NCBI RefSeq assembly: GCF_031769215.1
Contig: NW_026782006.1
Location: 992,001-1,056,000 of the forward strand
Source: Ylistrum balloti
Taxonomy: Eukaryota
Reading direction: 5' to 3'
Length of the DNA stretch: 64,000 bases
Part shown: positions 12,411 to 42,000 of the stretch, piece by piece
How positions within the stretch are numbered: the stretch's first letter is position 1
How the letters are laid out: the number at the start of each line of letters is the position of its first letter
Made by a program: the position numbers and the translations under genes
Notes under the pieces: model-generated
What the model was told of the DNA's origin: nothing
Database searches by the model: none
What the model saw: the letters and a program-made list of their open reading frames with translations, nothing else

Positions 12411-12689
12411 ACAAGACTGAAAGGACCGTTTTGCGTCAACTTTAAGTCTGCAAAATAGGGGTATAACTTTTCAGAATATCTTTTTTTTTCAATTACTATA
12501 TCAAGAAGCAATTAACAAAAGCAAAACACACAAAAAAATGATACGGAGAATAGATGACCGAAAACGAAAAATAAAAGAAACAACTTTCACGTGTGTATGA
12601 AACATATTCCACTCACGGGAAATTTGTTAAAAGTCATGGCAAAGTCTCAGAGAGAATACTTAACGTACCTCTGCTGGTAAGAGTACACA

Positions 12690-13730
12690 TACTGTTTACA
12701 CTGGTGTAGAGTGTACACATACTGTTTATACTGGTGTAAAGTATATACATACTGCTGTAAAGTGTACAGATACAGCTGTAAAGTGTACATATACTGGTGT
12801 AGAGTGTACATATACTGGTGTAGAGTGTACATATACTGCTGTGAAGTGTACTTATACTGCTGTAGAGTGTACATATACTGCTGTAAAGTGTACATATACT
12901 GGTGTAGAGTGAACATATACTGGTGTAAAGTGTACATATACTGCTGTGAAGTGTACATATACTGCTGTAAAGTGTACATATACTGGTGTAGAGCGTTCAT
13001 ATACTGGTGTAGAGTGTACATATACTGCTGTAAAGTGTACATATACTGCTGTAAAGTGTACATATACTGGTGTAGAGTGTACATATACTGCTGTAAAGTG
13101 TACATATACTGGTGTAGAGTGTGCATATACTGGTGTAGAGTGTACATATACTGCTGTGAAGTGTACATATACTGCTGTAGAGTGTACATATACTGCTGTA
13201 AAGTGTACATATACTGGTGTAGAGTGTACATATACTGGTGTAGAGTGTATATATACTGGTGTAGAGTGTACATATACTGCTGTAAAGTGTACATATACTG
13301 GTGTAGAGTGTACAAATACTGGTGTAGAGCGTTCATATACTGGTGTAGAGTGTACATATACTGGTGTAGAGTGTACATATACTGCTGTAAAGTGTACATA
13401 TACTGGTGTAGAGCGTACATATACTGGTGTAGAGTGTACACATACTGCTGTAGAGTGTACATATACTGCTGTGAAGTGTACATATACTGCTGTAGAGTGT
13501 ACATATACTGGTGTAGAGTGTACATATACTGGTGTAAAGTGTACATATACTGGTGTAGAGTGTACATATACTGGTGTAGAATGTACATATATGGTGTAAA
13601 GTGTACATATACTGGTGTAGAGTGTACAAATACTGGTGTAGAGCGTACATATACTGGTGTAGAGTGTACATATACTGGTGTAGAGTGTACATATACTGCT
13701 GTAAAGTGTACATATACTGGTGTAGAGTGT
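12690..13730. repeat. 21-bp minisatellite (GTGTACATATACTGGTGTAGA)
   Basis: Tandem copies, open in several frames on both strands. Confidence 0.97.
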
Positions 13731-14229
13731 ATACCTTCAAGTTTACAGTGGACACCCAAGAATACGAACAATATGCTTTGACGCATTGATAAACAGTCTC
13801 TTGACATTTGTAATCCAGCTTGAATCGCTATATTTTTAAAGCAAGACTTGCTCTCAACTTCTATTAACAGAAGTTCCCGATTTAAACTTGGGTATATTGA
13901 TAACGATTCATGTTAATGTTTTAATTATCCAATAAGCCATGTGTCCCGATAGTGATTATCTTATTGTGCTAGAAAAACAGATGTTATCATTTGTTAAACA
14001 CGATATATGGATCTGTTAAAATTAACGATATTATAGAAAATCAATATCGCCAAACTATATGTCAAACGTAATCATCATTATTATATAAAAATAAACATTA
14101 TTTCTGGTTTTTATATCAATGATGCTACCCTTCAGTTAACACTTCTTGGAATGATATATCTAGATATAATTTTATTAATGAGATCACTTAACAGAATTCT
14201 AGAGATCATGTAACAAAATGCAATTTCAG

Positions 14230-21000: not shown

Positions 21001-24000
21001 TCAGTATGGACAGATATATAGATATAAAACAACACTGACTTGTCAGTATGGACAGATGTCTAGATATAAAACAACACTGACTTGTCAGTATGGACAGATA
21101 TATAGATATAAAACAACACTGACTTGTCAGTATGGACAGATATATAGATATAAAACAACACAGACTTGTCAGTATGGACAGATATATAGATATAAAACAA
21201 CACAGACTTGTCAGTATGGACAGATATATAGATATAAAACAACACTGACTTGTCAGTATGGACAGATATATAGATATAAAACAACACTGACTTGTCAGTA
21301 TGGACAGATGTCTAGATATAAAACAACACTGACTTGTCAGTATGGACAGATTTATAGATATAAAACAACACTGACTTGTCAGTATGGACAGATGTCTAGT
21401 CTATTGATATAAAACAACACTGACTTGTCAGTATGGACAGATATATAGATATAAAACAACACTGACTTGTCAGTATGGACAGATGTCTAGATATAAAACA
21501 ACACTGACTTGTCAGTATGGACAGATGTCTAGATATAAAACAACACAAACTCATCAGTATGGACAGATGTCTAGATATAAAACAACACTGACTTGTCGGT
21601 ATGGACAGATGTCTAGATATAAAACAACACTGACTTGTCAGTATGGACAGATGTCTAGATATAAAACAACACTGACTTGTCGGTATGGACAGATATATAG
21701 ATATATAACAACACAAACTCATCAGTATGGACAAATGTATAGATATAAAACAACACTGACTTGTCGGTATGGACAGATGTCTAGATATAAAACAACACTG
21801 ACTTGTCAGTATGGACAGATGTCTAGAATCCGACCATTCCTTATGAACTTACGCTTGCTTGTACTGGCCATTATTTCTTCCATTGACATTTCCAGTGAAC
21901 TTGGTTTCCTTGAAAAGACATCTTCTGAAGACCCTGAAGTATTTGATGTTAGTCTAGGTCGTTCAAGAATCTCAAATGATTCTTGTCTGGACAAACGTCG
22001 AGAGCGTACACTTGCTCCACTGACGTATCCGGACTCCTGGCGTTCATATCTTTCTTTATTTCGGTAAACTGGAGTTGGGAAGTGCTGGGTGTCATCAATA
22101 GTCTTCCTTACATCTACTTGTAACTCCTTATTCTTTTTGGAATCAGAAGAGTACTGAGAACTGTCCGTCTCTTTTTCATTTGTCAGATCGTCACTGCTGT
22201 AACTCTCCTCTGCACTATCAAGCAAACTATCAGAATCTTCAGAACTCACGCTACAGTTGGATACAATAGTCGATGGTATACATTCAAATCTCTGTAAATG
22301 TAGAACATAAACATGCATTTTCGTAAGATCGTGCCATATGTGAATGAAATATATAAAATTCTAATTAAGTCTGTGAATTCCTATCATGTAAATGTATTTA
22401 TTCATTTGTTCTTTATTTTTCTTTCTAATCATTTAACGAGTTTCGTTTCAGTCCCGCAACATGAAAATGAAAAAAAACATAAGTCAACCTTCCTGATGTG
22501 TCTATGACCTACAACTATAGAAAGGTGTCGACTCTCCTGATGTGTTTATGACCTACAACTATAGGATGGTGTCGACTCTCCTGATGTCTCTGACCTACAA
22601 CTATAGGATGGTGTCGACTCTCCTGATGTGTCTATGACCTACAAATATATGATGGTGTCGACTCTCCTGATGTCTATGACCTACAACTATAGGATGGTGT
22701 CGACTCTCTTGATGTGTCTATGACCTACAACTGTATGATGGTGTCGACTCTTCTGATGTGTATGACCTACAACTATAGGATGGTGTCGACTCTCTTGATG
22801 TGTCTATGACCTACAACTACAGGATGGTGTCGACTCTCCTGATGTCTATGACCTACAACTATAGGATGGTGTCGACTCTGCTGATGTGTCTATGACCTAC
22901 AACTATAGGATGGTGTCGACTCTGCTGATGTGTCTATGACCTACAACTATAGGATGGTGTCGACTCTCCTGATGTCTATGACCTACAACTATAGGATGGT
23001 GTAAGCTCTCTTGATGTGTCTATGACCTACAAATATAGGATGGTGTCGACTCTGCTGATGTGTATGACCTACAACTATAGGATGGTGTAAGCTCTCTTGA
23101 TGTGTCTATGACCTACAACTATAGGATGGTGTAAGCTCTCTTGATGTGTCTACGACCTACAACTGTATGATGGTGTCGACTCTTCTGATGTGTATGACCT
23201 ACAACTATAGGATGGTGTCATCTCTCCTGATGTGTATATGACCTACAACTTTATGATGGTGTTGACCCTCCTAAAGTGTCTGACCTACAACTACAGGAAG
23301 GTGTCGACTCTCCTGATGTGTCTATGACCTACAACTATAGGATGGTGTCGACTCTCCTGATGTGTCTATGGCCTACAACTATAGAAAGGTGTCGACTTTC
23401 TTGATGTGTCTATGATCTACAACTGTAGGATGGTGTCGACTCTCCTGATGTCTATGACTTACAACTATAGGATGGTGTCGACTCTCCTGATGTCTATGAC
23501 CTACAACTATAGGATGGTGTCGACTCTCCTGATGTCTATGACTTACAACTATAGGATGGTGTCGACTCTCCTGATGTCTATGACCTACAACTATAGGATG
23601 GTGTCGACTCTCCTGATGTCTATGACCTACAACTATAGGATGGTGTCGACTCTCTTGAGGTGTCTATGACATACAACTACAGGATGGTGTCGACTCTCTT
23701 GATGTCTATGACCTACAACTGTAGGATTGAGTCGACTCTCTTGATGTGTCTATGACATACAACTATAGGATGGTGTCGACTCTCCTGATGTGTCTATGAC
23801 CTACAACTACAGGAAGGTGTCGAACTCTCTTGATGTGTCTATGACCTACAATTACAGGATGGTGTCGACTCTCCTGATGTGTCTATGACCTACAACTATA
23901 GGATTGAGTCGACTCTCTTGATGTGTCTACGACATACAACTACAGGATGGTGTCGACTATCCAGATGTTCCCGTGACGCCTTGGATGTTATATGTCTTCT

Positions 24001-27000
24001 TCTTACCGAATACTCCTGTTGTAACCGGGATTTCCTGTTTGCGTCTGTTCTTTTGACAGCTAGTAGGTGGAATCTCTTGATGTCAGGATATTCATCATGA
24101 TCTGTGGGCATCCCTCCTTCCATCATCTTTTCCATTGTTTTGTCATAGTAAGTGACAGATTGTTGAAGGAGGCTATAACCTTCAGCTGTTTAAGACACAA
24201 ATATTTTATAAAAAAGTTAAGACTTTGTGATATATGATCATTGGTCTGTGATCCATCACTAATTTAACATTACGTTCACTTTCAGAGATGATGTAGAACA
24301 ATTCAAACATTTGTTCCATATCATCTTTGATAGTGAACTTTAACTTTGCACAAAGTCACTGATATAGGCAACCTCTCTTATTGTTTTCATGTATCTGATC
24401 ACTTCAAAAGAGCATCAATATCAATCTGCATTGTCTACCGCATGTGATCTGGAAGACTTATAAAAGACACACAAGTGAATAACACTTTTTAATACAGATT
24501 TAGAACGAGATACATTAGAACCAAAGAAACTGCCATGATCTTCACTCATGCATAGAAACCAATATTTTACTTTCACAACAGTAATAACTATGGGCGTACA
24601 TAGATAACAAGAGTCCTAGTGGACTTGATGGTCTTATCAGATAAGCCCCGTCCTCGGGCCACTGTGGGGTTGGGAATGTATAATTCACATTTTCGCTCAT
24701 ATTAGGCCTGAGAAGGTTTCTGAAAAATTTCACTGAAACTGATCAGAGGTTTTTGAGAAAAATTCAAAAATTGTTTACGGACGCACGGTGCACAGCCCAC
24801 GATGCACGATGCCGGTCGAAAATGAGCCAATCAGGTCACAGCAGTCTCATTAAATATGTGCAGAATTTGCCGATAATCAATGGATAAAGGTAACAAGCGT
24901 AACAACCCAGTTCCATAAAAACAGTCCCTCAAAAGATATCATGCAGAAAGCAGTATCCGGACGGACGGTCGGATGGACGAAAGGGACCCATTTGAATACC
25001 CCCTCCATATTCGTCGGGCGGGGGATAAAAAGTACGATAACTTGAACTACATTCAATTTGACCGATTTTTGGCTCCGCCCATCAGCCCCTGGGGTCAACC
25101 GAGGTCAATATATGCTTCTCATCAAACTGTCAGTTTTTCTTATAATTCTAACCAAATTTGAACTATTTCTGAAAGAAAATAAAAAAAATGCTCAAAAATA
25201 AAATTTTCCTACATAAAATATTGTAAATTCTATCCCCTCCCCAAGTGGAAATTAGAGACCCTAGGATTATGAAATTTACTATTTTGGTAACGCACCGTAA
25301 GACACGTCCATGCATGAAGAGTATTTGGTTATATTTTTCTCTGGGTATTGAGAAGAAGATTTAAAAGAATTCAGTCAAATTGACCCGTTTTTGACCCCGC
25401 CAGTCAGCCGGGGTCACTATAAGCATTTTAAATTGCCATCTTACACTTATAATTCCTACTTAGTCTAAAATATTTCCAATAGAAAATAAACAAATTCAAA
25501 ATGTTCAAAAATATAATTTTCCTATATAAAATATATTAAATTTAACCCCTGTTTCAATCATTCCTACCCATTTTTTGCCCCGCCCCTCAGGCTCCTTGGG
25601 TTTGGGGACCATACCAATTAGAGTTTGGGAAGCCTTTAGCCATGGATGATTTTTGTTAAATTTCATTGAAATCGGTTCCGGCGTTTTCCAGAAGAAGTCC
25701 GAAATATTAAAAGTTTACGACGCACGTCGCCGGGATCGCAATAAGTCACCCTGAGATTTTGTCATATTATTGCATGGCGAGCTCTGGCCACCGGACAATA
25801 AAAATTTTCCACTTCTGTATAAGGTTTCTATCTTTTTACCATCAGATATTCGACCCCGTTATGTAAGGATTTCGGAATTAGAAAATTGATGCCTTAATCC
25901 AGTGCTCCCCATTTTGACCAGTATCAGCAACACTCTGAATTTCTCTGGTCAATTCCAGCGAGTTTGAAGAAGTAGACAACGTGTTAAGCCGACAAAACCA
26001 AATGGTCACATAACCTAACTATGGACACGAAACAAACCATTGATTAAGTGTAACATGAATACGAACCTATTTTATCGTCACGGATCCTCTGGTCTCCCCA
26101 GTTAAACAGGATACGGGCAATAAGGCTATAACTTAATGTCAAATACACATGGGGCTCCTTCAGAATCTTTTCTCGTACTTCAAGACTTTTTTTTGCATCA
26201 GCTTTTGCTTCCTCATACCTTTTTAATTGAAGGTACAAGATTGATCTGTTTCTCAAAGCTTCAGCATGATCGTCTGTGTTATCTGTGCCACGCCTTCTTC
26301 CCTCTGCTATTGCCCTGTCGAAATGTTCCAGAGTCTCGTTAATGTACTGATCACGTGATGAATCTTTTGAAGTATTATCCAATATTTCTTTTAACAAACA
26401 AACAGCGCGGTTGTTCCTGAACCGATCTACATCTGGATGCTCTTCTTCAGTAAAACGTCTCCATAGAGATGCCCTTTCTATTGCCTCTTCATGATACTTT
26501 CTGCATTTGTCATTGTCGTAGAGATAGAAATAACAACCAAGGTCATTAAAGACATTGGCAAGAATCATATTTAGATTTTCATTCCTCTCCATTACCTGTT
26601 GGAGTTCTTTGTCCTCTAAATACTTCTTTGCTCTGTCCAAGCTTTTTAAGATATCATGTCGTCTTTCAATTTTTCTGAAGTAAATAGCTTTCCTGTAGTA
26701 GTAGTTTCCTAGAGCTACTTTTATGGCGGTGTCGGATCTGCTGTTGGCCTCATCAAGTTTTTCTTCGGTAACATGTATAATGTCAGATATGCGTGTAGTA
26801 TCATCCATTTCAGTCAGCAACTGTATCATGTAGCCACGGAAAAAGAACAATTTATCGATTTCGTTATTTTGCTCCGCTTTGTGTGTTACCCACTCAAGCC
26901 ATCGCAGCTGTCTGTTTTGTGTAAGGGTACGTCTTCCTATCGCCAATATTCTGTTTGACGCTTGGATGTTTGACCGGCCAGTGTCATAATCATCTGTAAT

Positions 27001-30000
27001 TTCCTGTATCATATCAAAATAGCTCTGGACATGTACGTTATACTCTCTCATGTAAGATCCAACACTGTAGTAAGAATTTTCTTGTTCCTTTCCTATAATT
27101 CCAATGATATTTTCCATGTACTCCACAAACCTTATTCTGGCGGGCTCCATGACATTTGAAAACTCACTTTTACGTTGAATTAGAAATTCAAACATTCGAG
27201 GATGAAGAGAGTACAGGATGTTTCTGTCACTGTCTCCCAAACCTGGAGGTCTTTCTTGTGTTGTGTTCCGCTCCAAGTTTCCCTCTGTCTGAACAGTCAT
27301 ATCGTGGATTTCAATGAGATGACGGCTTTTCAAGTGGAATAGATTCATCTTTGTATTAAGAACTGGTGAATATGGAGCATTGTCTTCCTTCAGAACGGCA
27401 TCGGCTGCATCAATGTCAAAGGATGAGGTCTTGAACAAAGTAAGCTGCATCAGAATGTTCTTCATGTTTTCGTCAAGTCTATCATAACTCTCCTGGAGGC
27501 ATTTCTCCATTCTGTCCATGTTGATTACTCTATTTTTTCTCAGATGATTAATAATTTCAACTGGTTTCACCTGTCTACAGCAGCTTCTCAGAATACTACA
27601 TATTGTTCGTAAAGCTAGAGGAATGCCATCAGTCAGTGTAACAAGACTGTCGCATTCTGCTTCTGAGACTAAGTCCTGAAGAGACATGAATTAAGTGCAT
27701 TTTACTGTCAACCGTACTAAACTGAGCACATTTCAGTCCTTACCTTTACATGCAAATTAATTCAAATCAGAATAAGTATCAAATTGGTGTTAAAGGCAAC
27801 ACTTATTTACTGGATAACATCTTTTATTTGTTACTTAATATGCTCAACAAAAAAGAAACGCTCAAAGTCCCCCTGCAGTTCACCTTAGCTGGAAGGAAAT
27901 ACTGAAATATTTGGTCAGATATTACATCAAGAATTATCACCCTTCTCATCATTCTACCCTTGAATCATCCAAGCATGACGATGTCATTGTCTGATTTAAT
28001 GAGCTACCTAAGTCCAAATCACGCGGCGTGATCAAACCAAGCCTAATTGGTTTTTCAAACGAATAATTTCAACGGATACTCTAAGTTCAGCCACGTTGGC
28101 ATTTTGATTTCTCCATTGACCGAAATGCTATGCTTAACGCAAATTCAGAAGGGTAGCACAACTGCGATGTTGATGGATGGTCATAGCCAAACTGCTGTCG
28201 CACGGTAGTTTGGCAATACCCCGTGTACAATTAACCGTCTATACACTTTTCCATGCTACTGGGTTAGTTTCCCATCGTCACAGGAGTGGTCTTCCGCGTG
28301 TAACGACCGCACGACAAGAGAGGACGATTCGATTGCCGCATTTGCACAACAGATTCAGAACTGCTATAGAGACTGTGTCGCGTACCTAAGGTACTCATGG
28401 CATACTTATTAGTGCTCAAACTTCCAGGAACCGCTTGAGTGCCGATATAATCATTGCGTGCTGACCTTATGTCAGGTCACCTCTGACTCCACGGAGGCGG
28501 CAAGTGCGTCTTGACTGAATGCGCAGATATGACCCGAATAGGGTTTGGATGCGTCGGTGGAGGCGTGTGATGTTCACTGACGAGTCTAGATACTGTCTGT
28601 ATCGGTCAGACGGAAGAAAAAAAAGCATATCGCAGACGCGTTGAGCGTGTTGCCGACGCATGCGTGGTTGAACGCGATGTATTCGGTGGGGCTTCTGTAA
28701 TGGCAAGTGTTGCATATTGCCAGATTCTGACGTACTTTACTCATGGCAACTACGTTCAGCCTCTAGAATTGCCCCAAAATAACCCCGACATGTCTCCCAT
28801 CGAGCATCTGTGGGGTGATCTGGACAGGCGTAGTAGGAAACGTCCAGTTGATCGCAGCATTAACACAAGAATGGAACAAAATTCCCTTGAGGCGAATTAA
28901 TGTTCTCATGAATTCAATACATAAGAGACTCCGTGTAGAGAATCGTGTCTCCACACCTGGTACTTAATTGTCATTTTGTTTTTTGCGGATATCCCACTTT
29001 GAGTAACTACTGACGACACGAGCGACGTCACACAGACTTTTCTTCTGCAATATTGTAAATAGTAGACTTGTCCCTTCATATATTTTAATTGTGCGTTTCT
29101 TTTTTGGTTGAGTATATTTTTATGCGATTGTGCTCTACACAGACAGCTACCAAACATCAAATCAAGTTTATGAATAAATTTAATACGTTAAAATTGTGTT
29201 GAATATTTATTACATTTTCAAGCTTTCTAGACTTTTTCTTCAATTTCTCACAATGTTTTGATAACCATTTTGGAATATCTAATAACATATTTGATTATAT
29301 AAAGAAACGAACGTTCAAGCTATAAGGGCAGTGAAATATCTTGCTGATGAAGTCATTCATCGTGCCCAAATTGTCTTTATACCTTGGGAGTACACTTTCT
29401 GATTAGCTCCTTTGCGGGATGCCTGTCTAACGGTCCAACTTCCAAATTACGTATTAAATCCCTCATGTGAGGCATTGTTCTTTCGAAGATGTCACGCAGG
29501 TTTACACGGTTTGTAACGATGATACGGACCTGTCAAAAGAATAACACCAGTGGACTATGATCCCACTCATCCTTATATTATCAACACCAACGAACTATGA
29601 AACAAGCCAGAGCTATTACTTAAGGAGGGTTGTCAATAACACTATATGTTGGCACGAAAATGGCCCAGAATCGTGAATAGAAATGACATAGGGTTGTGAG
29701 CAACACCAAAGCACTTCCCTGAAATGACATTAGACAGTGAGAAACACAATACCTGCTCCCGGTAATGATACATGTTTGATAGCAAAACTAGACATGTTCC
29801 CAAAAATACCACGATCATTCGAGGAACCTAGCGCAAACGTTAAAAATCATCTCAGGCGGATTTTCAACAGTACCAAAAAACTGTAAATAAAGGTGGATAT
29901 TTAGGGTTTAAAAATGAAATGCTTTAATGAAATCAACCCAAGGACAGAAAACAATTCAGGAAAAAAACCAAATAAGTGACAGGTAACTTTGTTGTAACAT

Positions 30001-33000
30001 GAAGAATTTTAACAAAACTTTAGAAATGAACCGACAGTTAGGATCAAATATGGCGGAATCCCTATGGTGTTTTTCTGAGAAGTGTCTTTCTTTTGAGAAA
30101 GACGGACAGATCCACAATACCGCATGGAATTCCCCTTCCTGACTTCACATTGGACATTTTAAAAACCCATCCGAATAGGCTTGACATAGAACACCACAGA
30201 GGTAAGAATTAAAACCAAACCTTTGAACAGCAAGGTGCTGATACAACTGGCTATGTAATGCGCCTTACGCTTTAGAGGCAAATTAGTGAACTGTGACCAG
30301 GGGGATCGCTTTGGTATAATTGAAGTCATTTCACTCAAAACCCCTATCCTCCGAAAGTTTCAAATGGGAAAATGAACAATGGTATTTTATAAGGGATAAA
30401 TTGTGTCACAAAACAAAGACATATCCGATAAGAAATTCAAAATGCGTACAAGAAGGTCACACATTCTTGGAATGTCCAAAAGATTGGAAGTGTTGGGTCT
30501 GTGGGGATACTGAACACGAACAAACGGACAGTAAGTTCATTTAACAAGTCTACACTCCATTCTCAAACCTGATAATACAAGCAAGTGCGCTAACACGAGA
30601 GACGCAGTCAACGTTGACGAGGTAAACACAGTCGTACCAGGACAGGACGACAAATTATTCAACATATTATGAACCTAACGACAACATGACGAAAAGCGTA
30701 CTCAAGGACAACCTGTCGACAAAATAGCTGGTTAGCGACATGCTCGTTGCATTTTGACCAGACGCAAAGACCAAGATATGCCATTCATCAATAAAACATT
30801 GCGACCGTAATGAACTCCTGATATACTACTTCCACCCCAGTAAGACGAACGGTATCTACCAACACCTTACGAAGACTTCATGAAAATAAAAAAAATACAT
30901 GACAAATGAACGACAAACACAGGTGTCTTAACAAGAATTCACAAACAAGGCAATATCTTATCGAAGAAAAAGTACCAATACTAATGTCACCGAGGTCTTC
31001 GAAACAAGTGTTTGAATGGTAGTTTCTGAGAAAACAACAGCAGAGGTGTAACAATAATCAGGAACACACTCATCAATGTGATTTACAGAAGGAAATCATT
31101 GATGGAAAAGGAAGTTGCATTTTATTTCACGGTGACATTAATGATATACTCTTTTTTATCGTGAATGTGTATGCGATAAATTGCGAGCAAACTGGAAACT
31201 TTTTTTACAACAAACAAAAGCAAATAATATCCAATAAAGTAGGTTTTTACTTGTCGGAGATTTTCAGAGAAATCATCACGAAAGTACAGTATACGTGGCG
31301 ACGTAACAAAAAGCCAGCAGAATTGATTAATTCTGAGTAAGTAATGATACAATTAACATGGTCAAAAGTGTAGTTTTCAACAGATCTCAAGCTGTATATC
31401 TTAAATTAGAAAGATAGATAGAGGTCCTGGTATATGGAATATAAACACAAGTGCAAAATGAAGGATATAAGGTACTAATTAGTAGTGATTTAATTGAGAA
31501 ATATTTCTATGTGCGATCGATATGAAGTTGGACGTGTTTGATACTCGTAAATTTGCCTTTTGGTTCTGTTGTTGAATGATTTGTATACATGACGCTTACT
31601 TTCCCGGAACACCTGGACTTACTCTACTTTTTTTATCTTCTATGTTTATGTTGACATGTTGGTATTTTCTTCGTCTCCTTGTTTTTTGTTATTGTTGTTT
31701 TTTATCTTAGGTTGTACAAAAACACACAAGTGAAAAACACCTTTCCATAATCTAGAGTGAGACACAGCAGAGCCAAACACTGAATTAAACTGCATCATAC
31801 AGCTGTTTCGTCTTTCTAGGACTCTTCAGTGATGTTAAGAGCATAAATTTGAAGCCTAGAAGACGATTAAGGAAAATCAAAAGTGATCAAAAGAAAAGTA
31901 AAAATCTAGACGGGAATGTGCAGCAGCCCCATAATTAGAAAAATTTCGTAATTTTGATACATCAGATAAATTTAGAATATAGTCAAGTACATGTTTTGCT
32001 CTGAACCGTGTCACTATTCGAGTGAATTTAAACGTGGCATGAAGGTTACGTCAAACATCGAGAACTACAGCTAAAGATATTTGCGTTTTTATAAACAGTG
32101 TCAGTAATCAACATATTCATGTATCAAACAAAATACCAAGCTAAAGATGGCTTATCTGCAAATTGCTGCTCTCACGTGTGTAAATGGTACCCTCTTTTTA
32201 AAACCGAAAGTACTGAATGTATACATAATTTGGAAGACGGACAATTTACCCGCATCATGGTTGAAAGTGTAGCGGTATGTGAGTGTGAATAATTTCTGTA
32301 TAGTGATTGTATAATCACGAGTTTTTAATGAACATACATTAAATTTACTTTTTATAATTAGAAAAATATTTTGGTACATAATTAAAGGTAATAAGGCACT
32401 GAATCAATCAGGACAAAGATACAGTGATTTGCTTTCCATCTAGACAACATGTGCAGTATCTAACACCAGAAAGAGGGTGAATAGAAGTGGGAGATAAACC
32501 CGTGTTATCATGAGAATAGTATGCGTATGTTATTATACAAATATGTTTGAACAAAACTTTGATAACACAAGTTCAAATCTACTAGCACATACAATCAACT
32601 TATGATGAAACGGCTCTACGCATAGTTCGTGCTCTGAAGTATGTCCTTTTTCTTGTCACTTTTAGTATAAATTTTATCTATGTATGAAGAAGAATTGATA
32701 TGTATCTTAATTAACATTCACCATACTAACAAAAGAAATGAACACATGTTTAGAAATACTGTAAAATCATAAAAGATCATAATGAAGATTAGAAATGTGC
32801 AATACGTGTAAGGCGTTCCATTGGTATTCTGAACACTCTGTACATTACAGTTGTTAACCTCATGTTATTGTATTTGTCCATTATATTGAAATGACCATTA
32901 TAAGCCATTTATAAAACGCCAAATTCGGTGTACAAACACCGACAGTGAATTGCATCAAATGAGTATCCATATATTTCATTAGCTTATCAATAACATATTA

Positions 33001-35740
33001 CACAGGTCTGTAAATGTAATACGCTTGAATCTTAATACTTACATAGCTGTGCGGTACATGTTTAAGGACAAAAGGGTTCACAAAGTATTAACATTTACAT
33101 CATTCTGATGGTAAAAGGAAATGTCAAATAATCTTACCTTACAAGTATCTCGTAACTTCTCCAATATCTTTTGGACGAATTGTAGAAACTGATTTTCATT
33201 TTTGTGAATGATATCGTCCACATTATCCAGCATGACAATTGTTCCTGTAGAGATAACAATGGTGTTAAATAGGTATAATGATTAACGATATCTGAACACC
33301 CATTTCACTTATCGTCTTGATCGATTTCACTATTATCATTAATATTGAACTGCACTATACCTTTGTTTCGTTCTTCTAGGACTCGCCAGTAATATTAAGG
33401 ACATCCATTTTAAAGACGATTGAGGAAACTCCAAAGTGATCGAAAGAACATTCAAACTCTTGACGGGGAGGTGCACTAGCCCCATGATTCCAGAAATTTC
33501 GCAATTTTCATGTATCTGATAATAACTTAATAACAATGTCTAGTATATGTGTGCATTCTGAATCATGTGACTATTGAATTAATTAAAATGTAGCATGCAG
33601 GTTACAGCAAACCGAAGTAACGTATATATGATCCCGAATAGAAAACCAAAAAATATTTTATTAGATTTAAGGAGGATATAATAGTGTGAACAAATTAAAA
33701 TAAATCTAAATAACAAATGATTTGTTTAAAAGAGTTGGGGAAATATTGAAATGTTCTTTGACGTCAGATAGTTGCACGTAACGCTTGACAACGAAATTTT
33801 GAATTTACGTGGTATTTCAACATCTCGTGCTTTTTTTCTTTGGTAATCGCTTACAGATCTGCTTTATACACCAAATTAGAGATAACCAAATAGGCACATG
33901 AAAAATATTTGTTAGAAAACCAGCTTAGTTAACCTTTGCCTCGTTTGCGACAGAACAGCAAAACATACCAACTTCAATGCAGTGACCAAAAACATCGCTC
34001 TGATTGGCCAAAACTAAAAAAGGTGATATCATTGCTAGAAAAGTGTTATCATATACGATATCTTATATCTTAAATGAAATTGATAGATTCCTATATTTCA
34101 TTAGCAAAAATTAAACCTGATAAATATATTGTGGTGTTTTATAATTAAAACAAAATAAACAAAAAAATGACACGAACATCTTCTGACAAAGAATTTTTCT
34201 GCCATGTTTTGAAATATGATTATTTATATTATTCATATCGTTATAAATATAGGTAAACACTTTGACACATCTGATAATACTTACTGCGAGTGATTTTACT
34301 AAGGTGGTCTAAAATGTTGGCTTGCATCTTGCTGTCCTTGGTATCCTTAAGACTGTTTAATAGGTCATCGGATGACATGCCGTCGTCTTTCAATTGGAGC
34401 TCCAAGACAATGTCCTTCAACAAATCCCCCATAGAATCTTTCTCTCTGTAATAAAATGCAAGAAAATGGTGATAAAGTTGGGAATACATAGAAGGCTTTA
34501 ATAAGTTTCTATATAAATGTTATATGTTTGCATTCATTTAAAATTGTTTGTGTAAGATATTCTCGATTCAATCACAGATTGTCTCAACAATGCCGTAATG
34601 TCTTAATTAAGTTATTTTTCTGACGTGAGATTTCATACCACATCAGAATTTATTTTGATCAAAATATAATCTATTAAACAATGGGTTAGTTTACCTTAGA
34701 TCAATTTTGATAACCTGCCAGTGCTTTTTAGAAGACCATAGTCTACGACAAATTTCATTGCCAATAGCAGTCTTTCCTATGCCTCCGGCGCCCGAAATGC
34801 TCACAGCTGTAAATAAGATCAAATAAAACATTACGTATGAGTTTTTAAAAAAGTTATGATTTCTACGTCACTGAAAAACTTTCTAATTATAAATAAGTGA
34901 TACTCAAATGAACGCTTTACACTCTGGTCTGAACAGTAAAAAGTGTATGGCCCTTCAATTTAAATCATTTATGTATGTGATTAAAATGTTGATCATGAAA
35001 AGAGCGTTAAATACGTACGTTTACGGAATTAGCCAGATATCAATTATCACTTTTCCAATTAATCTCTAATGATGCAACCAGCCAGACAAAATATTAGCAC
35101 TGAAACTTTTAAAACGTGTTTCAATTTTGAGGTGGGGGTATCGATGCAGGAGGTCACTAATTAAGCATATCAAATTAACTATAATTACTAAACATTATGC
35201 TATAACTTTGATTACTTATTAAAGATATCATTCTACCTTTGAATACTAATTTAACATTATACACTAGATATAATAATTAGTTATAGTACTCCAACCGGAA
35301 GAACTCTTCTTACCAGGAACGGTGCTTTCGATGAAATCCTTGATTTGATTTTCCCGTCCAACGAAGTTTACATCAAATATGTCCATCTGCATACATCTTC
35401 GTTTGTGTTCCACAAACTTCGTTTTGTACTTTTTTAACATATCCGCTACTCTGTTACGGCCTAGGTCACGATGCCAGTTTTGAAAATCTGTCACATTGAT
35501 CAGAAAATCAAGCATGTCTTCTTCTCCGAAATTATTCTTCAGAATTTGGAAATAATGGGTCGCATTTTGTATATTGTTTTTGGACAACCCGCCGAGTGAA
35601 GTCCTCGACAGATTGATAATCTCGTCAAATGTCAAGTCATCGCCATCCAAATCTGAGATGAGATCATTTACAATCACATCAAAGGGATCTAACCTAGTTT
35701 GATCTCCAAACGCAATACGGTCATCTTTTGTGTAAGCCAT
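15092..35740 (-). CDS. NLR/STAND protein: DED-like death fold + NB-ARC + TPR repeats + Ser/acidic tail, 9 coding exons, ~1131 aa
   Basis: Exons 35314-35740, 34695-34806, 34285-34445, 33138-33244, 29383-29529, 26067-27675, 24007-24185, 21853-22291 and 15092-15306. All junctions are GT-AG and phase-compatible, 3396 nt in total. Motifs in order: FVGRE, Walker A GAGGIGKT, Walker B IVMLDNVDD, sensor-1 IIVTNR, LEVGPL, GIPLAL, YSLHP (MHD position), then TPR-like helices (LANVFNDLG, ALRNRSILYLQLKRYEEAKADAKKSLE). Confidence 0.92.
15835..21826. repeat. ~6-kb 42-bp minisatellite (CAGTATGGACAGATGTCTAGATATAAAACAACACTGACTTGT) filling the last NLR intron
   Basis: About 140 tandem copies. Source of all the MSRYKTTLTCQYGQ ORFs. 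Confidence 0.98.
22495..23960. repeat. 42-44-bp minisatellite (ATGACCTACAACTATAGGATGGTGTCGACTCTCCTGATGTGTCT) in NLR intron 7
   Basis: Tandem copies. Confidence 0.97.
24606..25760 (+). mobile_element. Cluster of Helentron-associated/HINE-like repeat fragments
   Basis: AACAAGAG-type start, ACGG/GACG tetranucleotide tails and GC-rich terminal hairpins (ccccctcc...gggcggggg). Family assignment is from memory of bivalve repeats. Confidence 0.5.
27841..29114 (+). mobile_element. Near full-length decayed Tc1 transposon in NLR intron 5
   Basis: TIRs TGCTCAACAAAAAAGAAACGC and its reverse complement GCGTTTCTTTTTTGGTTGAGTA, flanked by TA. Frameshifted transposase pieces: PRVTTARQERTIR, VMFTDESRYCL, FGGASVM, PDMSPIEHLW. 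Confidence 0.9.
29640..31130 (+). mobile_element. Decayed L1/Tx1-type ORF1 (gag-like zinc knuckles) remnant
   Basis: 30440-30530 translates to C..EGHTFLECPKDWKCWVCGDTEH, two degenerate CCHC knuckles. Flanks are broken by stops. Boundaries are approximate. Confidence 0.5.
31793..31834 (-). ncRNA. Minimal type I hammerhead ribozyme (Penelope-type)
   Basis: Minus strand reads CATCA-CTGAAGA-GTC(CTAGAAA)GAC-GAAA-CAGCTG-TA-TGATG. It has a complete catalytic core, stem I CATCA/TGATG, stem II GTC/GAC, a palindromic stem III and a GUA cleavage triplet. Confidence 0.85.
32099..32292 (+). CDS. Orphan terminal exon with cystine-knot-like Cys spacing
   Basis: Acceptor ttgcgtttttataaacag, then phase-1 frame SVINIFMYQTKYQAKDGLSANCCSHVCKWYPLFKTESTECIHNLEDGQFTRIMVESVAVCECE*. 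ATTAAA about 47 nt after the stop. Upstream exon not found. Confidence 0.4.
33350..33615 (-). mobile_element. Second, diverged copy of the ~270-bp hammerhead-bearing element with a degenerate ribozyme
   Basis: Aligns by eye along its length to 31790-32060. The core reads CTGGCGA...GAAA and stem III has lost its palindrome. Confidence 0.75.
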
Positions 35741-36045: not shown

Positions 36046-39000
36046 GGCCCCCTCCAGGGGGACTCAGGAGGTGGGGTGAGGGCTCCTGGAAAAATTTGTA
36101 AACAAAGAAGCCTGTCGGTGCTAACATGGCTTAATTAAATGACCATGAATAACACAATGTTTAATTGTTGTTAGAAACAAGAAATAAAAGTGGGTGGCTA
36201 AAAGGCATCGTCCCATTCAGAATCTTCTTCATCGCTGACAGTGTCCTCTTACCTTTCCTTCATTTCATGGTCAAGGTTTAGCCGTTGCACAGCCACCCTC
36301 ACCTGGGACACAGGCTCACCAAGACTGCCAGATACAACAGCTGGGTCAGTTTGTATCCCGGAGTCCTGGACCTCGGTCAGAAGTTCCTTATCAATCATGG
36401 CATATGAAATATCACGTTTGGGAGGTGGTTTATAACTTTCTATTTATTTGATGTTCTATGTGAAAACTTGACAATTCGCTTGTCCGTACTGTCGATATTA
36501 CTTCAGCCATCATATATCTATTCCAGTAACACGCATCCAAAGAACAATTGTTTGTTAGGATCCAGTACGGATATTAGACCATAACCGTTAATATTACTTA
36601 CCAGGTTTCATATATGTATATCACTCATACTTATCATTGCAGTCCCATTATCTCTACTTTAATCTACTAATCAAACCTCACCTTCCAAGGTTCTGTGATC
36701 ACATTGGCCTGAATGAATATGACATTTCTCCTTTTTACGTAGTTTACATGTTTATAACATCCTCGGTAAGTGTAGGACTAGACGCTTTCGTAGAATTCTG
36801 ATCATTCAGTTTTTATGCAAAGGGGGTTTAATCTGCATTCGGTAAAAATGATATCCGATCTTATTGACACATTTTATGGTCTTTACTTGTTCTTTAAACG
36901 TTAAGCGATGAAAAAAATTGTTTACAGACCGACGATAGACTACGGACGTAAGGCGACTGTCCAGCATTTGAACTTGGGCTGAAAAAGATTACATATCAAA
37001 GGATGTTCTCAAAAAGATCGCGGTTTTTCTTTTAACACCCTCGACTGTATATGTTAAACGTAGTTACCTTATATATTTCTGACTACTATTTTTATCATGA
37101 ATTGTAGGTAACAATATTGTATATATATATACAGTCTACATATCAGGTGATTTCCTAGGTAAATACAGTCTACATACCAGGTGCTTTCCCAGATAAGTAC
37201 ATTCTACATACCAGTTGATTCCCCAGGTAAGTACCATAATCATACCATTTGATTCCCTAGGTAAGTACCATAATCATACCAGGTGATTTCCCAGGTAAGA
37301 ACAGTCTACATACCAGGTGCTTTCCCAGATAAGTACAGTCTACATACCAGATGATTTCCCAGGTATGTACAGCCTACATACCAAATGATTTACCAGGTAA
37401 GTACCGTCTACATACACAGGTGATTTTCAGGTAAGTACAGCCTACATAACAGGTGATTTCCCAGGTAAGTACAGCCTACATACCAAATAATTTCCCAGGT
37501 GTTAGTAAATTACAATAATGTCTATATGACATGCCTCGAGAGCGTTGCTCGAAACTATCACTGATACATGTTTACCTGCAAATCAACCTCCGACATCAAG
37601 GCCTTCCCGTTTTGACTACGGCTATTGGGTCTCCTAGAGAGACTTCTTCAGCAATTATTCAGGCTACAGCTCCGACAAGCACCTATACATTACAAGCCAA
37701 TAGATGAAGTTTCAGACTGGGTCCCCTACCTGTTTGTTCTGTCACGAACTATAAAATAGAGAACATTTCCTTCTATACTGTCCGAAACGGGAACGCAAAC
37801 ATGAAAAACATCTACCACAAATACTTTTAAACACCAGATATATACTATGAGTGTAGCTACTGATCCTGAAGTCGACAAGATTGTACCTTCCCGATAGTGC
37901 AAGAATTGTATAATCCAAGTGAAAACGACACGAGCAAAATCGAAAGAATCAGCCTATTTCTGGAATATTACCTTCATCTGCAAAGATCAAGTTTGATGGT
38001 CTCCAAATTGAAGCTAACCACTTCAGTGTACTATAACAAATGTCAGTTACTATTATGAGTCCAAGTAGGGGATATGTTGATTTAATGTAACTTCCTCTTC
38101 TAACATACAATTTGTATGACTGCGCATTTAATCTTTCCGTGATGTGCGCAGCGTTGACGTGTGCATCAATTAATTTTCATGCGTTAATGTGCATTACCCA
38201 TTTCTAAACTGGGGTACAAATCCAGTTTTAAGTTTCAGCTAAATTATGACGACCGACACAAAAAATTGAAAAAATGAGCTGCACTTACATATTTATCTGC
38301 TTACATCCCAGTATGTAGGAATAACACTTTAAAAAATTGATAGAACTTCAATATCCAGGGCGTTGGATTGCAAGGTCAAGACACAAATGAGACAGGATAT
38401 ACAAAAATCCACCAATCATTTGACGAAATCCAAAAAAAAAGACACGCACTTCAACAATAACGGTAACACACAGATGTGTATGTGTATCGTTATATAACAG
38501 TGATGTTTATGTATCCAGGGTTTTCTATAAATATTTTAATAATAGGCTGTAAAATGGAGTAGGAGTCTGGCGAAGCCAGCCGACTGAGCCGTAACGCGGC
38601 GAGGCGGGGATGGTTTGAGGAGGGGGCACTGGCCCCCTCCAGGGGGACTCAGGAGGTGGGGTAAGGGCTCCTGGAAAAAATTGTAAACAAAGAAGCCTGT
38701 CGGTGCTAACATGGCTTAATTAAATGACCATGAATAACACAATGTTTAAAAGGCATCGTCCCATTCAGAATCTTCTTCATCGCTGACAGTGTCCTCTTAC
38801 CTTTCCTTCATTTCATGGTCAAGGTTTAGCCGTTGCACAGCCACCCTCACCTGGGACACAGGCTCACCAAGACCGCCAGATACAACAGCTGGGTCAGTTT
38901 GTATCCCAGAGTCCTGGACCTCGGTCAGAAGTGCCTTATCAATCATGGCATATGAAATATCACGTTTGGGAGGTGGTTTATAACTTTCTATTTATTTTGA

Positions 39001-42000
39001 TGTTCTATGTGAAAACTTGACAATTCGCTTGTCCGTACTGTCGATATTACTTCAGCCATCATATATCTATTCCAGTAACACGCATCCAAAGAACAATTGT
39101 TTGTTAGGATCCAGTACGGATATTAGACCATAACCGTTAATATTACTTACCAGGTTTCATATATGTATATCACTCATACTTATCATTGCAGTCCCATTAT
39201 CTCTACTTTAATCTACTAATCAAACCTCACCTTCCAAGGTTCTGTGATCACATTGGCCTGAATGAATATGACATTTCTCCTGTTTACGTAGTTTACATGT
39301 TTATAATATCCTCGGTAAGTGTAGGACTAGACACTTTCATAGAGTTCTGATCATTTCAGCTTTTATGCAAAGGGGGTTTAATCTGCATTCGGTAAAAATG
39401 ATATCCGATCTTATTGACACATTTTATGGTCTTTACTTGTTCTTTAAACGTTAAGCGATGAAAAAATTGTTTACAGACCGACGATAGACTACGGACGTAA
39501 GGCGACTGTCCAGCATTTGAACTTGGGCTGAAAAAGATTACATATCAAAGGGTGTCCTCAAAAAGATCGCGGTTTTTCTTTTAACACCCTCGACTGTATA
39601 TGTTAAACGTAGTTACCTTATATATTTCTGACTACTATTTTTATCATGAATTGTAGGTAACAATATTGTATATATATATATACAGTCTACATACCAGGTG
39701 ATTTCCTAGGTAAATACAGTCTACATACCAGGTGCTTTCCCAGATAAGTACATTCTACATACCAGTTGATTCCCCAGGTAAGTACCATAATCATACCATT
39801 TGATTCCCCAGGTAAGTACCATAATCATACCAGGTGATTTCCCAGGTAAGAACAGTCTACATACCAGGTGCTTTCCCAGATAAGTACAGTCTACATACCA
39901 GATGATTTCCCAGGTATGTACAGCCTACATACCAAATGATTTACCAGGTAAGTACCGTCTACATACACAGGTGATTTTCCAGGTATGTACCGTCTACATA
40001 CCAGGTGATTTTCCAGGTAAGTACTTCTTCATACCAGGTGATTTCCCAGGTAAGTACCGTCTACATGCCAGGTGATTACCCGGAGAAGTACCGTTTACAT
40101 ACCAGATGATTTCCCAGGTAAATATATTCTACATACCACATGATTTCCCAGGTAAATATATTCTACATACCAGGTGATTTCTCAGGTATGTACCGTCTAC
40201 ATACCAGTTGATTTCCCAGGTAAGTACCGCCTACATACCAGGTGATTTCCCAGGTAAGTACCGTTTACATACCGGTTGATTTCCCAGGAAAGCACCGTTT
40301 ACGTACCAGTGATTTACCAGGTAAATACAGACTACATACCAGGTGATTTTCAGGTAAGTACAGCCCACATACCAGGTGATTTTCAGGTAAGTACAGCCTA
40401 CATACCAGGTAATTTCCCAGGTGTTAGTAAATTACAATAATGTCTATATGACATGCCTCGAGAGCGTCGCTCGAAACTATCACTGATACATGTTTACCTG
40501 CAAATCAACCTCCGACATCAAGGCCTTCCCGTTTTGACTACGGCTATTGGGTCTCCTAGAGAGACTTCTTCAGCAATTATTCAGGCTACAGCTCCGACAA
40601 GCACCTATACATTACAAGCCAATAGATGAAGTTTCAGACTGGGTCCCCTACCTGTTTGTTCTGTCACGAACTATAAAATAGAGAACATTTCCTTCTATAC
40701 TGTCCGAAACGGGAACGCAAACATGAAAAACATCTACCACAAATACTTTTAAACACCAGATATATACTATGAGTGTAGCTACTGATCCTGAAGTCGACAA
40801 GATTGTACCTTCCCGATAGTGCAAGAATTGTATAATCCAAGTGAAAACGACACGAGCAAAATCGAAAGAATCAGCCTATTTCTGGAATATTACCTTCATC
40901 TGCAAAGATCAAGTTTGATGGTCTCCAAATTGAAGCTAACCACTTCAGTGTACTATAACAAATGTCAGTTACTATTATGAGTCCAAGTAGGGGATATGTT
41001 GATTTAATGTAACTTCCTCTTCTAGCATACAATTTGTATGACTGCGCATTTAATCTTTCCGTGATGTGCGCAGCGTTGACGTGTGCATCAATTAATTTTC
41101 ATGCGTTAATGTGCATTACCCATTTCTAAACTGGGGTACAAATCCAGTTTTAAGTTTCAGCTAAATTATGACGACCGACACAAAAAATTGAAAAAATGAG
41201 CTGCACTTACATATTTATCTGCTTACATCCCAGTATGTAGGAATAACACTTTAAAAAATTGATAGAACTTCAATATCCAGGGCGTTGGATTGCAAGGTCA
41301 AGACACAAATGAGACAGGATATACAAAAATCCACCAATCATTTGACGAAATCCAAAAAAAAAGACACGCACTTCAACAATAACGGTAACACACAGATGTG
41401 TATGTGTATCGTTATATAACAGTGATGTTTATGTATCCAGGGTTTTCTATAAATATTTTAATAATAGGCTGTAAAATGGAGTAGGAGTCTGGCGAAGCCA
41501 GCCGACTGAGCCGTAACGCGGCGAGGCGGGGATGGTTTGAGGAGGGGGCACTGGCCCCCTCCAGGGGACTCAGGAGGTGGGGTGAGGGCTCCTGGAAAAA
41601 ATTGTAAACAAAGAAGCCTGTCGGTGCTAACATGGCTTAATTAAATGACCATGAATAACACAATGTTTAAAAGGCATCGTCCCATTCAGAATCTTCTTCA
41701 TCGCTGACAGTGTCCTCTTACCTTTCCTTCATTTCATGGTCAAGGTTTAGCCGTTGCACAGCCACCCTCACCTGGGACACAGGCTCACCAAGACCGCCAG
41801 ATACAACAGCTGGGTCAGTTTGTATCCCAGAGTCCTGGACCTCGGTCAGAAGTGCCTTATCAATCATGGCATATGAAATATCACGTTTGGGAGGTGGTTT
41901 ATAACTTTCTATTTATTTTGATGTTCTATGTGAAAATATGACAATTCGCTTGCCCGTACTGTCGATATTACTTCAGCCATCATATATCTACTCCAGTAAC

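What the first reader, a model, noticed from the sequence alone, without database searches (positions are those of the whole stretch)
31793..31834. Intact hammerhead ribozyme in sense orientation inside an NLR intron
Seen: a complete minimal type I hammerhead on the minus strand. It has the core CUGAAGA/GAAA, a GUA site, a 5-bp stem I that can extend via UUAA/UUAA past a bulge, and palindromic stem III CAGCUG. It lies in intron 4 of the minus-strand NLR, so it is part of the pre-mRNA. Established: minimal hammerheads with palindromic stem III are characteristic of Penelope-like retroelements and work best as dimers. Inference: it could cleave the NLR pre-mRNA co-transcriptionally and tune receptor dosage, or it is simply a young PLE relic.
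Basis: partly seen in the sequence, partly recalled or inferred. Interest (0 to 1): 0.8.

Follow-up and report, generated by a model that had tools for sequence, protein, structure and literature searches.

The report
Decayed hammerhead repeat copy in intron
The self-cutting RNA motif is really there, in the sense strand of an immune-receptor-like gene's intron, but it is one slightly decayed copy among thousands of a ~400-base mobile repeat that carries this motif all over the genome, so it is most likely an ordinary insertion and not a regulator of the gene.

Summary
The sequence observation holds. Window 31793-31834 (minus strand) has a complete type I hammerhead core, a GUA cleavage site, a 5-bp helix I, a 3-bp helix II and a 2-bp helix III with the palindromic loop AGCU. 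It lies in the sense strand of a 3,608-nt GT-AG intron of an NB-ARC/STAND-TPR gene.

It is not a special feature of this gene:
- It belongs to a nearly full-length, 13%-diverged copy (31698-32088) of a ~400-nt AT-rich dispersed repeat.
- The 648.5-Mb genome holds about 8,900 near-identical ribozyme cores, roughly equal on both strands.
- 1,390 copies are closer to the full 44-nt consensus ribozyme than this one is.
- This copy has lost one pair in helix I and at least one in helix II. It scores 23.7 bits on Rfam Hammerhead_1 (gathering score 34), against 34-36 bits for consensus-type copies.
- Its monomeric hammerhead fold is about 8 kcal/mol weaker than that of a consensus-type copy.
- It has no usable dimer partner in the window. 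The only other copy, in the previous intron, has a dead core.
- Its ribozyme segment is no better conserved than in other copies.

The family matches the animal "non-LTR retrozymes" published for mussels. The scan has already recorded hammerhead repeats of this family (45-nt arrays) on other DNA of this genome. Cleavage, expression and orthologous conservation could not be tested.

The parts
31793..31834 (-). Type I hammerhead motif. The catalytic core is intact (CUGAAGA...GAAA...GUA). Helix I has 5 bp, helix II 3 bp, and helix III 2 bp with the loop AGCU. The predicted cut lies between 31798 and 31797.
   Evidence: Sequence. Rfam RF00163 full-length match at 31792-31835, 23.7 bits against a gathering score of 34. 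It differs at 3 of 44 positions from the family consensus ribozyme: one at the free N7 position, one breaking the 6th pair of helix I, and one breaking the 4th pair of helix II.
31698..32088 (-). Nearly full-length copy of a ~400-nt dispersed, AT-rich (34.8% GC) non-autonomous repeat of retrozyme type. It lacks roughly the first 30 nt of the unit, and the hammerhead sits about 85 nt from its 3' end.
   Evidence: nhmmer with a profile of 19 genomic copies: profile positions 68-435, E 3.7e-109, where full-length copies start at about profile position 30-38. BLAST to other copies gives 81-88% identity. It is 13.3% diverged from the majority. GC content.
33335..33655 (-). Second, older copy of the same repeat in the preceding intron, on the same strand, with a dead hammerhead. 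The core reads CUGGCGA, helix III reads CAAAGG (not palindromic), and helix I is broken.
   Evidence: nhmmer E 7.5e-52, profile positions 65-354. It is 24.6% diverged, with 10 of 44 changes in the ribozyme segment.
24442..24539 (-). 3'-terminal fragment of the same repeat, downstream of the gene, with no hammerhead.
   Evidence: nhmmer E 6.5e-11, profile positions 358-424.
29530..33137 (-). Host intron of 3,608 nt (GT...AG). It is 'intron 4' if the exon holding the first ATG is counted as exon 1. The cleavage site lies 1,340 nt from the donor and 2,268 nt from the acceptor.
   Evidence: Splice sites and phase continuity ...DTCK|VRIIVTNR.
33138..33244 (-). Host exon with the Walker B motif (VMLDNVDD).
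   Evidence: Open stretch and splice sites.
29383..29529 (-). Host exon with the RIIVTNR motif (49 codons).
26044..27675 (-). Last host exon: the GIPLAL (ARC-type) motif followed by TPR repeats, ending at the stop codon.
   Evidence: Translation. Pfam TPR_12 2.9e-8 and TPR_10 1.1e-6. Acceptor at 27676/27675.
34694..34867 (-). Open stretch holding the P-loop exon (GAGGIGKT). Exact exon borders were not set.
   Evidence: Pfam nSTAND3 3.4e-4 and NB-ARC 5.7e-3, both below the curated cut-offs, as expected for a 58-aa piece.

Best explanation
This is a solitary, middle-aged insertion of a ~400-nt non-autonomous hammerhead-bearing retroelement (an animal 'non-LTR retrozyme' type repeat) that happened to land in sense orientation in an intron of an NB-ARC-TPR gene.

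Inferred from the published mussel, coral and axolotl elements: in its source copies the type I hammerhead, working as a dimer between neighbouring units, cuts multimeric transcripts into unit-length RNAs that are circularised and reverse-transcribed by a retrotransposon enzyme supplied in trans.

Shown here: the intronic copy keeps the catalytic nucleotides but has lost a pair in helix I and at least one in helix II, and it has no second functional copy nearby. Inferred from that: it is spliced out with the intron and cuts the pre-mRNA little or not at all. Its effect on the host gene is most likely nil.
For: Copy number and strand balance. There are 8,921 matches within 3 mismatches of the 32-nt core (4645 forward, 4276 reverse, reversed-pattern control 0) in 648.5 Mb. 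1,390 copies lie within 1 mismatch of the full 44-nt consensus ribozyme, whereas the window copy has 3. At least 1,289 dispersed-type ribozyme/3'-flank junctions exist, and the ~285-bp flank search gave more than 3,655 candidates.

Repeat membership. nhmmer E 3.7e-109. Units are ~400 nt, with occasional partial head-to-tail units or tails (L019, L020) and adjacent inverted partial copies (L012, L015). GC is 34.8%.

Decay of this copy. Rfam gives 23.7 bits against 35.8, 34.1 and 32.1 for relatives. Helix I has 5 bp against a modal 6, and helix II has 3 bp against a modal 4-5. The hammerhead fold is worth -1.9 kcal/mol against a competing MFE of -8.6, compared with -10.2 for a consensus-type copy. 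The local fold has a z-score of 0.

No partner. The only other copy in 64 kb has a dead core and a non-palindromic helix III.

No site-specific selection. The ribozyme segment shows 3/44 changes against 14.2% in the rest (p = 0.24). That matches the pooled average of 19 other copies, 7.5% against 14.9%.

Literature. The mussel genome has ~5,000 type I hammerheads in 350-390-bp repeats expressed as circRNAs (PMC7229834). A short helix III with a palindromic loop needs a second copy for efficient cleavage (PMC4209133). About 43% of Xenopus retrozyme copies overlap introns (bioRxiv 10.64898/2026.07.22.740005).
Against: All catalytic core nucleotides and the GUA site are intact, so some residual self-cleavage cannot be excluded. 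The mussel hammerhead was reported to cleave co-transcriptionally from a cloned genomic repeat (PMC7229834). The substrate half of this copy (helix III strand, GUA, helix I 3' strand) is identical to consensus. All three fragments of the family in the window lie on the gene's sense strand, though with n = 3 the chance of that is 0.25. Expression, circular RNA, retrotransposition and the mobilising enzyme are inferred from the literature and not shown. No autonomous element carrying this hammerhead was found.
Confidence: 0.86

Rival explanations
1. The intronic hammerhead cleaves the nascent NB-ARC-TPR pre-mRNA in cis, slowly and as a monomer, and so lowers or tunes the receptor's mRNA output.
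For: The motif is in sense orientation in a 3.6-kb intron, with 2,268 nt still to be transcribed before the acceptor, which gives time for cleavage. The catalytic core and GUA site are intact. There is published precedent for an intronic ribozyme whose inhibition raises host protein (PMC10919898).
Against: Helix III has only 2 bp and needs a dimer partner (PMC4209133), and none is available in cis. Helices I and II are weakened relative to the family, and the hammerhead fold is strongly disfavoured. Thousands of equal or better copies exist without strand bias. The ribozyme segment shows no extra conservation. No orthologue or close paralogue was available to show retention.
Confidence: 0.05
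2. Abundant RNAs of the same repeat family pair in trans with the consensus-identical substrate half of the intronic copy, forming a double hammerhead that cuts the pre-mRNA. This would couple the gene's output to the repeat family's expression.
For: All three changes in the window copy lie in its 5' 'enzyme' half, and its substrate half is identical to a consensus-type copy. For two consensus-type RNAs, the predicted minimum-energy dimer is exactly the double hammerhead, with intermolecular helices I and III. Mussel retrozyme RNAs are reported at up to 1% of total RNA (PMC7229834).
Against: For window plus consensus RNA, the predicted best dimer is not the hammerhead arrangement. If such trans-cutting were real, it would hit every sense-strand genic copy and would not be specific to this gene. 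Expression of the family in this animal is unknown. Nothing was tested experimentally.
Confidence: 0.03
3. The match is a chance resemblance and not a hammerhead at all.
For: It falls below Rfam's gathering score. A loose core pattern occurs at chance frequency in the window. The local fold has a z-score of 0.
Against: It is homologous, position by position, to a repeat family whose members reach the gathering score. The 32-nt core has about 8,900 matches against 0 for the reversed control.
Confidence: 0.01

Closest known systems
Metazoan non-LTR retrozymes (Cervera and de la Pena 2020, PMC7229834), especially those of the mussel Mytilus galloprovincialis
   Same: Thousands of copies per genome; unit of about 350-400 nt; low GC; one type I hammerhead per unit, with a short helix III and a palindromic loop; no ORF; some head-to-tail arrangement.
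   Different: At this site the copy is solitary and slightly truncated at the 5' end, not a tandem. In this genome the 45-nt ribozyme unit itself is also amplified into long spacer-less arrays, which the mussel paper does not describe. circRNA expression was not tested here.
Hammerheads of Penelope-like elements (Cervera and de la Pena 2014, PMC4209133; Craig et al. 2021, PMC8557442)
   Same: Type I topology; thought to act as dimers; associated with retroelements that insert as partial tandems or inverted copies.
   Different: No RT/GIY-YIG ORF belongs to this element. None of 30 GIY-YIG loci sampled carries this hammerhead within 1.5 kb. The motif has a real helix III, unlike the PLE 'min-HHR'. 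Bivalve PLEs are mostly Naiads, which lack canonical hammerheads (PMC8557442).
Functional intronic ribozymes of vertebrates: the conserved intronic hammerheads of amniotes (cited in PMC7229834 as references 22 and 25) and the CPEB3 HDV-like ribozyme (PMC10919898)
   Same: A self-cleaving motif in the sense strand of an intron of a protein-coding gene.
   Different: Those are conserved at orthologous sites, and by my own recollection (not checked here) they are single- or few-copy and fold stably as monomers. This one is a decayed member of a family of thousands of copies, needs a partner, and shows no site-specific conservation.
Newt satellite 2 and Schistosoma SM-alpha hammerhead repeats (cited in PMC4209133 and PMC7229834)
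   Same: Type I hammerheads with a weak helix III inside short dispersed or tandem repeats; the double-hammerhead mechanism.
   Different: Different sequence families and hosts. No direct comparison was made here.

Membership tests
Hammerhead ribozyme, type I (Rfam RF00163) | Conserved core CUGANGA ... GAAA ... UH, with the G10.1-C11.1 and A15.1-U16.1 pairs | tested here: met
   All core positions are present: N7 = A, H17 = A, G-C closes helix II, and A-U opens helix III.
Hammerhead ribozyme, type I (Rfam RF00163) | Three helices around the core, with helix I open | tested here: met
   Helix I has 5 bp, helix II 3 bp, and helix III 2 bp plus a 4-nt loop. All are at or below the family's usual lengths.
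Hammerhead ribozyme, type I (Rfam RF00163) | Score at or above the curated gathering threshold (34 bits) | tested here: not met
   23.7 bits. Homologous copies elsewhere reach 35.8 and 34.1 bits.
Hammerhead ribozyme, type I (Rfam RF00163) | Self-cleavage | not testable with these tools
   Needs in vitro transcription or RNA-end mapping.
Metazoan non-LTR retrozyme | Non-coding repeat unit of about 170-400 bp carrying a type I hammerhead, with low GC (<45%) | tested here: met
   The unit is ~400 nt, has no ORF, and has 34.8% GC.
Metazoan non-LTR retrozyme | Tandem (dimer to multimer) genomic arrangement | tested here: inconclusive
   The copy at this site is solitary. Among 19 sampled loci most are solitary, and a few have partial tandem units or tails (L019, L020) or inverted partial copies (L012, L015). 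The published Xenopus families also have many monomers (bioRxiv 10.64898/2026.07.22.740005).
Metazoan non-LTR retrozyme | Expression as linear and circular unit-length RNA | not testable with these tools
   No transcriptome was available.
Penelope-like element (autonomous) | ORF with a reverse transcriptase and a GIY-YIG endonuclease, flanked by pseudo-LTRs | tested here: not met
   The 391-nt copy has no ORF. The intron has no RT or GIY-YIG ORF. 30 GIY-YIG loci lack this hammerhead, and the one nearby match is an opposite-strand neighbour.
Selected intronic ribozyme (HH9/HH10 or CPEB3 type) | Conservation at the orthologous site, above the neutral background | tested here: inconclusive
   No related genome, close paralogue or empty site was available. 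Within the family, the ribozyme segment of this copy is no better kept than in other copies.
NLR / STAND NTPase (host gene) | P-loop NTPase of the NB-ARC/NACHT type plus a repeat sensor domain | tested here: met
   GAGGIGKT, VMLDNVDD, RIIVTNR and GIPLAL motifs lie in successive exons. There are weak nSTAND3 and NB-ARC hits and TPR_12/TPR_10 above cut-off. The repeats are TPR, not LRR, so 'NLR' holds only in the loose sense.

The most novel reading that the evidence does not exclude
Sense-strand intronic copies such as this one keep a consensus-identical 'substrate half'. They might be cut in trans by abundant unit-length RNAs of the same repeat family through a double-hammerhead. If so, the output of this immune-receptor-like gene (and of every other gene with such a copy) would depend on the activity of the repeat family.
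Probability: 0.03. Interest if true: 0.75.

Novelty: new member of a known kind. Interest (0 to 1): 0.12.

Why it matters
As it stands, it matters little. It documents one more genic insertion of a hammerhead-bearing repeat, in a genome that holds thousands of them, and the kind of element is already published for another bivalve. It is a useful caution for the scan: in this genome any window may contain a 'complete hammerhead', and its position in a gene is not evidence of function. If residual cis or trans cleavage were shown, sense-strand intronic copies would be a genome-wide source of ribozyme-mediated transcript loss. That would be interesting, but it would not be specific to this gene.

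Tried and rejected
1. The Rfam gathering scan of the whole window found nothing. Only the permissive local scan lists the motif.

2. A loose hammerhead pattern in the window gave 5 matches against 5.2 expected. The other four are chance matches, so they offer no dimer partner.

3. I searched for an empty site or paralogous intron using the two intron flanks. Only other repeats matched: a ~95-nt dispersed repeat related to a 56-nt satellite, and low-copy matches of 66-81% identity. There is no empty site.

4. I searched for paralogues of the last exon. The best is 25% identical, too distant to compare introns.

5. I tested for a link to autonomous Penelope elements through the Pfam GIY-YIG family. 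None of 30 loci has the family hammerhead. The one element match (L077) lies upstream of a degraded endonuclease fragment on the opposite strand. This negative result is weak, because bivalve PLEs are mostly Naiads with an N-terminal endonuclease and no canonical hammerhead (PMC8557442), and the loci extend only 1.5 kb either side.

6. A word-based protein search with the last exon returned only three distant, unnamed or TPR-named proteins. It gave no orthologue and no taxon.

I resent it in plain letters within the rule.

8. A candidate target-site duplication (ATAAAAAC-like) seen by eye at the two ends of the copy was not pursued. In DNA this AT-rich it is not distinguishable from chance.

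9. I did not verify the organism. 'Scallop/bivalve' comes from earlier notes of the scan.

Full report
**What is at the coordinates**

On the minus strand, 31834..31793 reads as follows: helix I 5' strand CAUCA, core CUGAAGA, helix II GUC / 7-nt loop / GAC, GAAA, then A-C-[AGCU]-G-U (helix III of two pairs closing a palindromic loop), the cleavage-site A, and helix I 3' strand UGAUG. The predicted cut lies between 31798 and 31797. The UUAA/UUAA extension of helix I beyond a three-base bulge is also present.

Rfam's type I hammerhead model aligns over its full length at 31792-31835 with 23.7 bits (E 0.0027 for the 601 nt searched). That is below the curated threshold of 34 bits, so the standard scan of the window returns nothing. 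A loose core pattern is no rarer than chance in the window, and the local RNA does not fold better than shuffled sequence. Its minimum-energy fold is a different structure. The motif alone would therefore be only suggestive.

**Why it is nevertheless a real hammerhead: it is a repeat**

The 32-nt core has 8,921 matches within three mismatches in the 648.5-Mb genome. Of these, 4,645 are on one strand and 4,276 on the other, against 0 for the reversed control. The surrounding ~285 bp matches dozens of scored loci at 81-88% identity, out of more than 3,655 candidates.

Aligning copies with their flanks defines a unit of about 400 nt that ends without a poly(A) tail. A profile built from 19 copies places the window copy at 31698-32088 (profile positions 68-435, E 3.7e-109). 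Full-length copies start at about profile position 30-38, so roughly 30 nt are missing at the window copy's 5' end.

Better-preserved relatives reach Rfam's threshold: 35.8 bits inside arrays, and 34.1 and 32.1 bits for two dispersed copies. At least 1,289 copies share the ribozyme/3'-flank junction typical of the dispersed unit.

In many places the 45-nt ribozyme unit itself is amplified head to tail without a spacer. There the type III model also scores across adjacent units, up to 46.7 bits against a threshold of 48.5. Earlier notes of this scan had already recorded such 45-nt arrays elsewhere in this genome and took it for a scallop or bivalve genome. I saw the arrays myself but did not verify the organism.

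**State of this copy**

Compared with the 44-nt consensus ribozyme of the dispersed unit, the window copy has three changes. One is at the free position N7. One turns the sixth pair of helix I into an A·C mismatch. One turns the fourth pair of helix II into a C·A mismatch.

- Among 104 instances collected from fetched loci, helix I is 6 bp in 72 and helix II is 5 contiguous pairs in 60. Here they are 5 and 3.
- The hammerhead fold of the window copy is worth -1.9 kcal/mol against a competing minimum of -8.6. A consensus-type copy gets -10.2.
- Genome-wide, 1,390 copies (714/676 by strand, control 0) lie within one mismatch of the full 44-nt consensus, so all are better preserved than this one.
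- The whole element is 13.3% diverged from the majority of 19 other copies, which is mid-range for the sample (8-24%) and so not young.
- The ribozyme segment has 3/44 changes against 14.2% in the rest (Fisher p = 0.24). That matches the pooled figures for the other copies, 7.5% against 14.9%. The relative conservation of the ribozyme is a property of the family, not of this site.

**Partner for dimerisation**

The literature is explicit on this point. Metazoan type I hammerheads with a 1-2-bp helix III and a small palindromic loop cleave poorly as monomers and form an active double hammerhead with a second copy (PMC4209133; the axolotl data in PMC7229834 agree).

The profile search finds only two other pieces of the family in the 64-kb window:

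- An older copy at 33335-33655 lies on the same strand in the preceding intron. Its core reads CUGGCGA and its helix III CAAAGG, so it is dead and not complementary. It is 24.6% diverged.
- A 3' fragment at 24442-24539 has no ribozyme.

No cis partner therefore exists. In a cofolding test, two consensus-type RNAs give exactly the double hammerhead as the best dimer. Window plus consensus, and window plus window, do not, because the window copy's enzyme half falls into a competing hairpin. The substrate half of the window copy is identical to consensus. This leaves trans-cleavage by family RNAs as a remote possibility.

**Host gene**

Minus-strand open stretches carry, in order:

- an N-terminal exon with the first ATG (within 35815-35267);
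- a P-loop piece, GAGGIGKT (within 34867-34694; weak nSTAND3 and NB-ARC matches);
- a further piece (within 34519-34244);
- a Walker B exon, VMLDNVDD (33244-33138);
- an exon with RIIVTNR (29529-29383);
- a last exon that opens shortly before GIPLAL and ends in TPR repeats (27675-26044; Pfam TPR_12 and TPR_10).

Exons 4, 5 and 6 have canonical acceptors and donors and join in phase. The hammerhead thus lies in the sense strand of a 3,608-nt GT-AG intron, 1,340 nt from the donor. 'NLR' is loose, because the repeats are TPR and not LRR.

I searched the exons piece by piece and did not build or search a joined coding sequence.

The nearest paralogue of the last exon is 25% identical and lies ~50 kb away. 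The intron flanks match only other repeats. No related genome is available, so conservation at the orthologous site could not be tested.

**What the element is**

It has no ORF, is AT-rich (34.8% GC), is about 400 nt long, and carries one type I hammerhead near its 3' end. It occurs mostly as solitary copies, with some partial head-to-tail units or tails (L019, L020) and adjacent inverted partial copies (L012, L015).

This matches the animal non-LTR retrozymes described by Cervera and de la Pena. In the mussel these comprise ~5,000 hammerheads in 350-390-bp repeats, expressed as abundant circular RNAs (PMC7229834). A 2026 preprint argues that such elements derive from the terminal repeats of Penelope-like elements, and it finds ~43% of Xenopus copies in introns (10.64898/2026.07.22.740005).

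The tandem/inverted insertion pattern is the one described for PLE-type integration (PMC8557442). However, I could not tie the element to an autonomous PLE. None of 30 GIY-YIG loci has this hammerhead within 1.5 kb, and the one element match is an opposite-strand neighbour. That negative result is weak, since bivalve PLEs are mostly Naiads, with an N-terminal endonuclease and no canonical hammerhead (PMC8557442).

**Verdict**

The best reading is an ordinary, somewhat decayed intronic copy of a known kind of mobile element.

Shown: the sequence, copy numbers, decay, intron placement, and absence of a cis partner. Inferred from the literature: transcription, dimer-dependent cleavage, circular RNA and retrotransposition of the family. 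Untested: any cleavage at this site.

Noticed in passing
L028 (G000:C18:512570-515601), L029, L022, L009:2968-3285 and many others: There are long spacer-less arrays whose 45-nt unit is one complete hammerhead of the same family. In them Rfam's type III model also scores across adjacent units (up to 46.7 bits, gathering score 48.5). In L009, and at C19:665666-665799, an array sits inside or abuts a dispersed ~400-nt unit, which suggests local expansion of the ribozyme segment. Earlier scan notes had already recorded such arrays.
   Followed up: partly
window 33335-33655 (-): A second, older copy (24.6% diverged) of the same repeat lies in the preceding intron of the same gene, also in sense orientation, with a dead hammerhead core (CUGGCGA). 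With the 3' fragment at 24442-24539, all three pieces in the window are on the gene's strand. With n = 3 this is not significant.
   Followed up: partly
window 36046-52777, with 34-nt arrays at 37130, 39681, 42603, 45594, 48585 and 51575: A 34-nt minisatellite recurs about every 2.99 kb just upstream of the gene. This fits the large near-identical tandem array that another note of the scan describes on this window.
   Followed up: no
window 15823-21827: A 42-nt minisatellite is repeated 143 times. The 381-aa ORF at 20267-21412 and its weak 'Galaxin-like repeat' Pfam hit (below cut-off) run through this repeat and are probably artefacts of translating it. The window holds many other 20-44-nt minisatellites (3273-4765, 6137-7300, 10905-12413, 12727-13731, 22491-23968, 52785-54023).
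   Followed up: no
window 31483-31577 (-): About 120 nt downstream of the hammerhead repeat, the same intron holds a ~95-nt dispersed repeat (803 candidates genome-wide, 77-86% identity). Its core also forms a 56-nt satellite on contig C850 (619317-620727).
   Followed up: no
G000:C149:1070720-1072246 (-) and C149:1056103-1057455 (+), just beyond the window's end: A distant paralogue (25% identity, open) of the TPR-bearing last exon lies ~50 kb away on the same strand. A fragment with 7 stop codons lies right after the window on the opposite strand. Together they suggest a small local cluster of NB-ARC-TPR genes and pseudogenes.
   Followed up: no
L005 copy, cofolded with itself: For two consensus-type 58-nt RNAs, the predicted minimum-energy dimer is exactly the double hammerhead: intermolecular 6-bp helix I, 8-bp helix III, and intramolecular helix II. 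This is a clean computational illustration of the dimer model for this family.
   Followed up: partly
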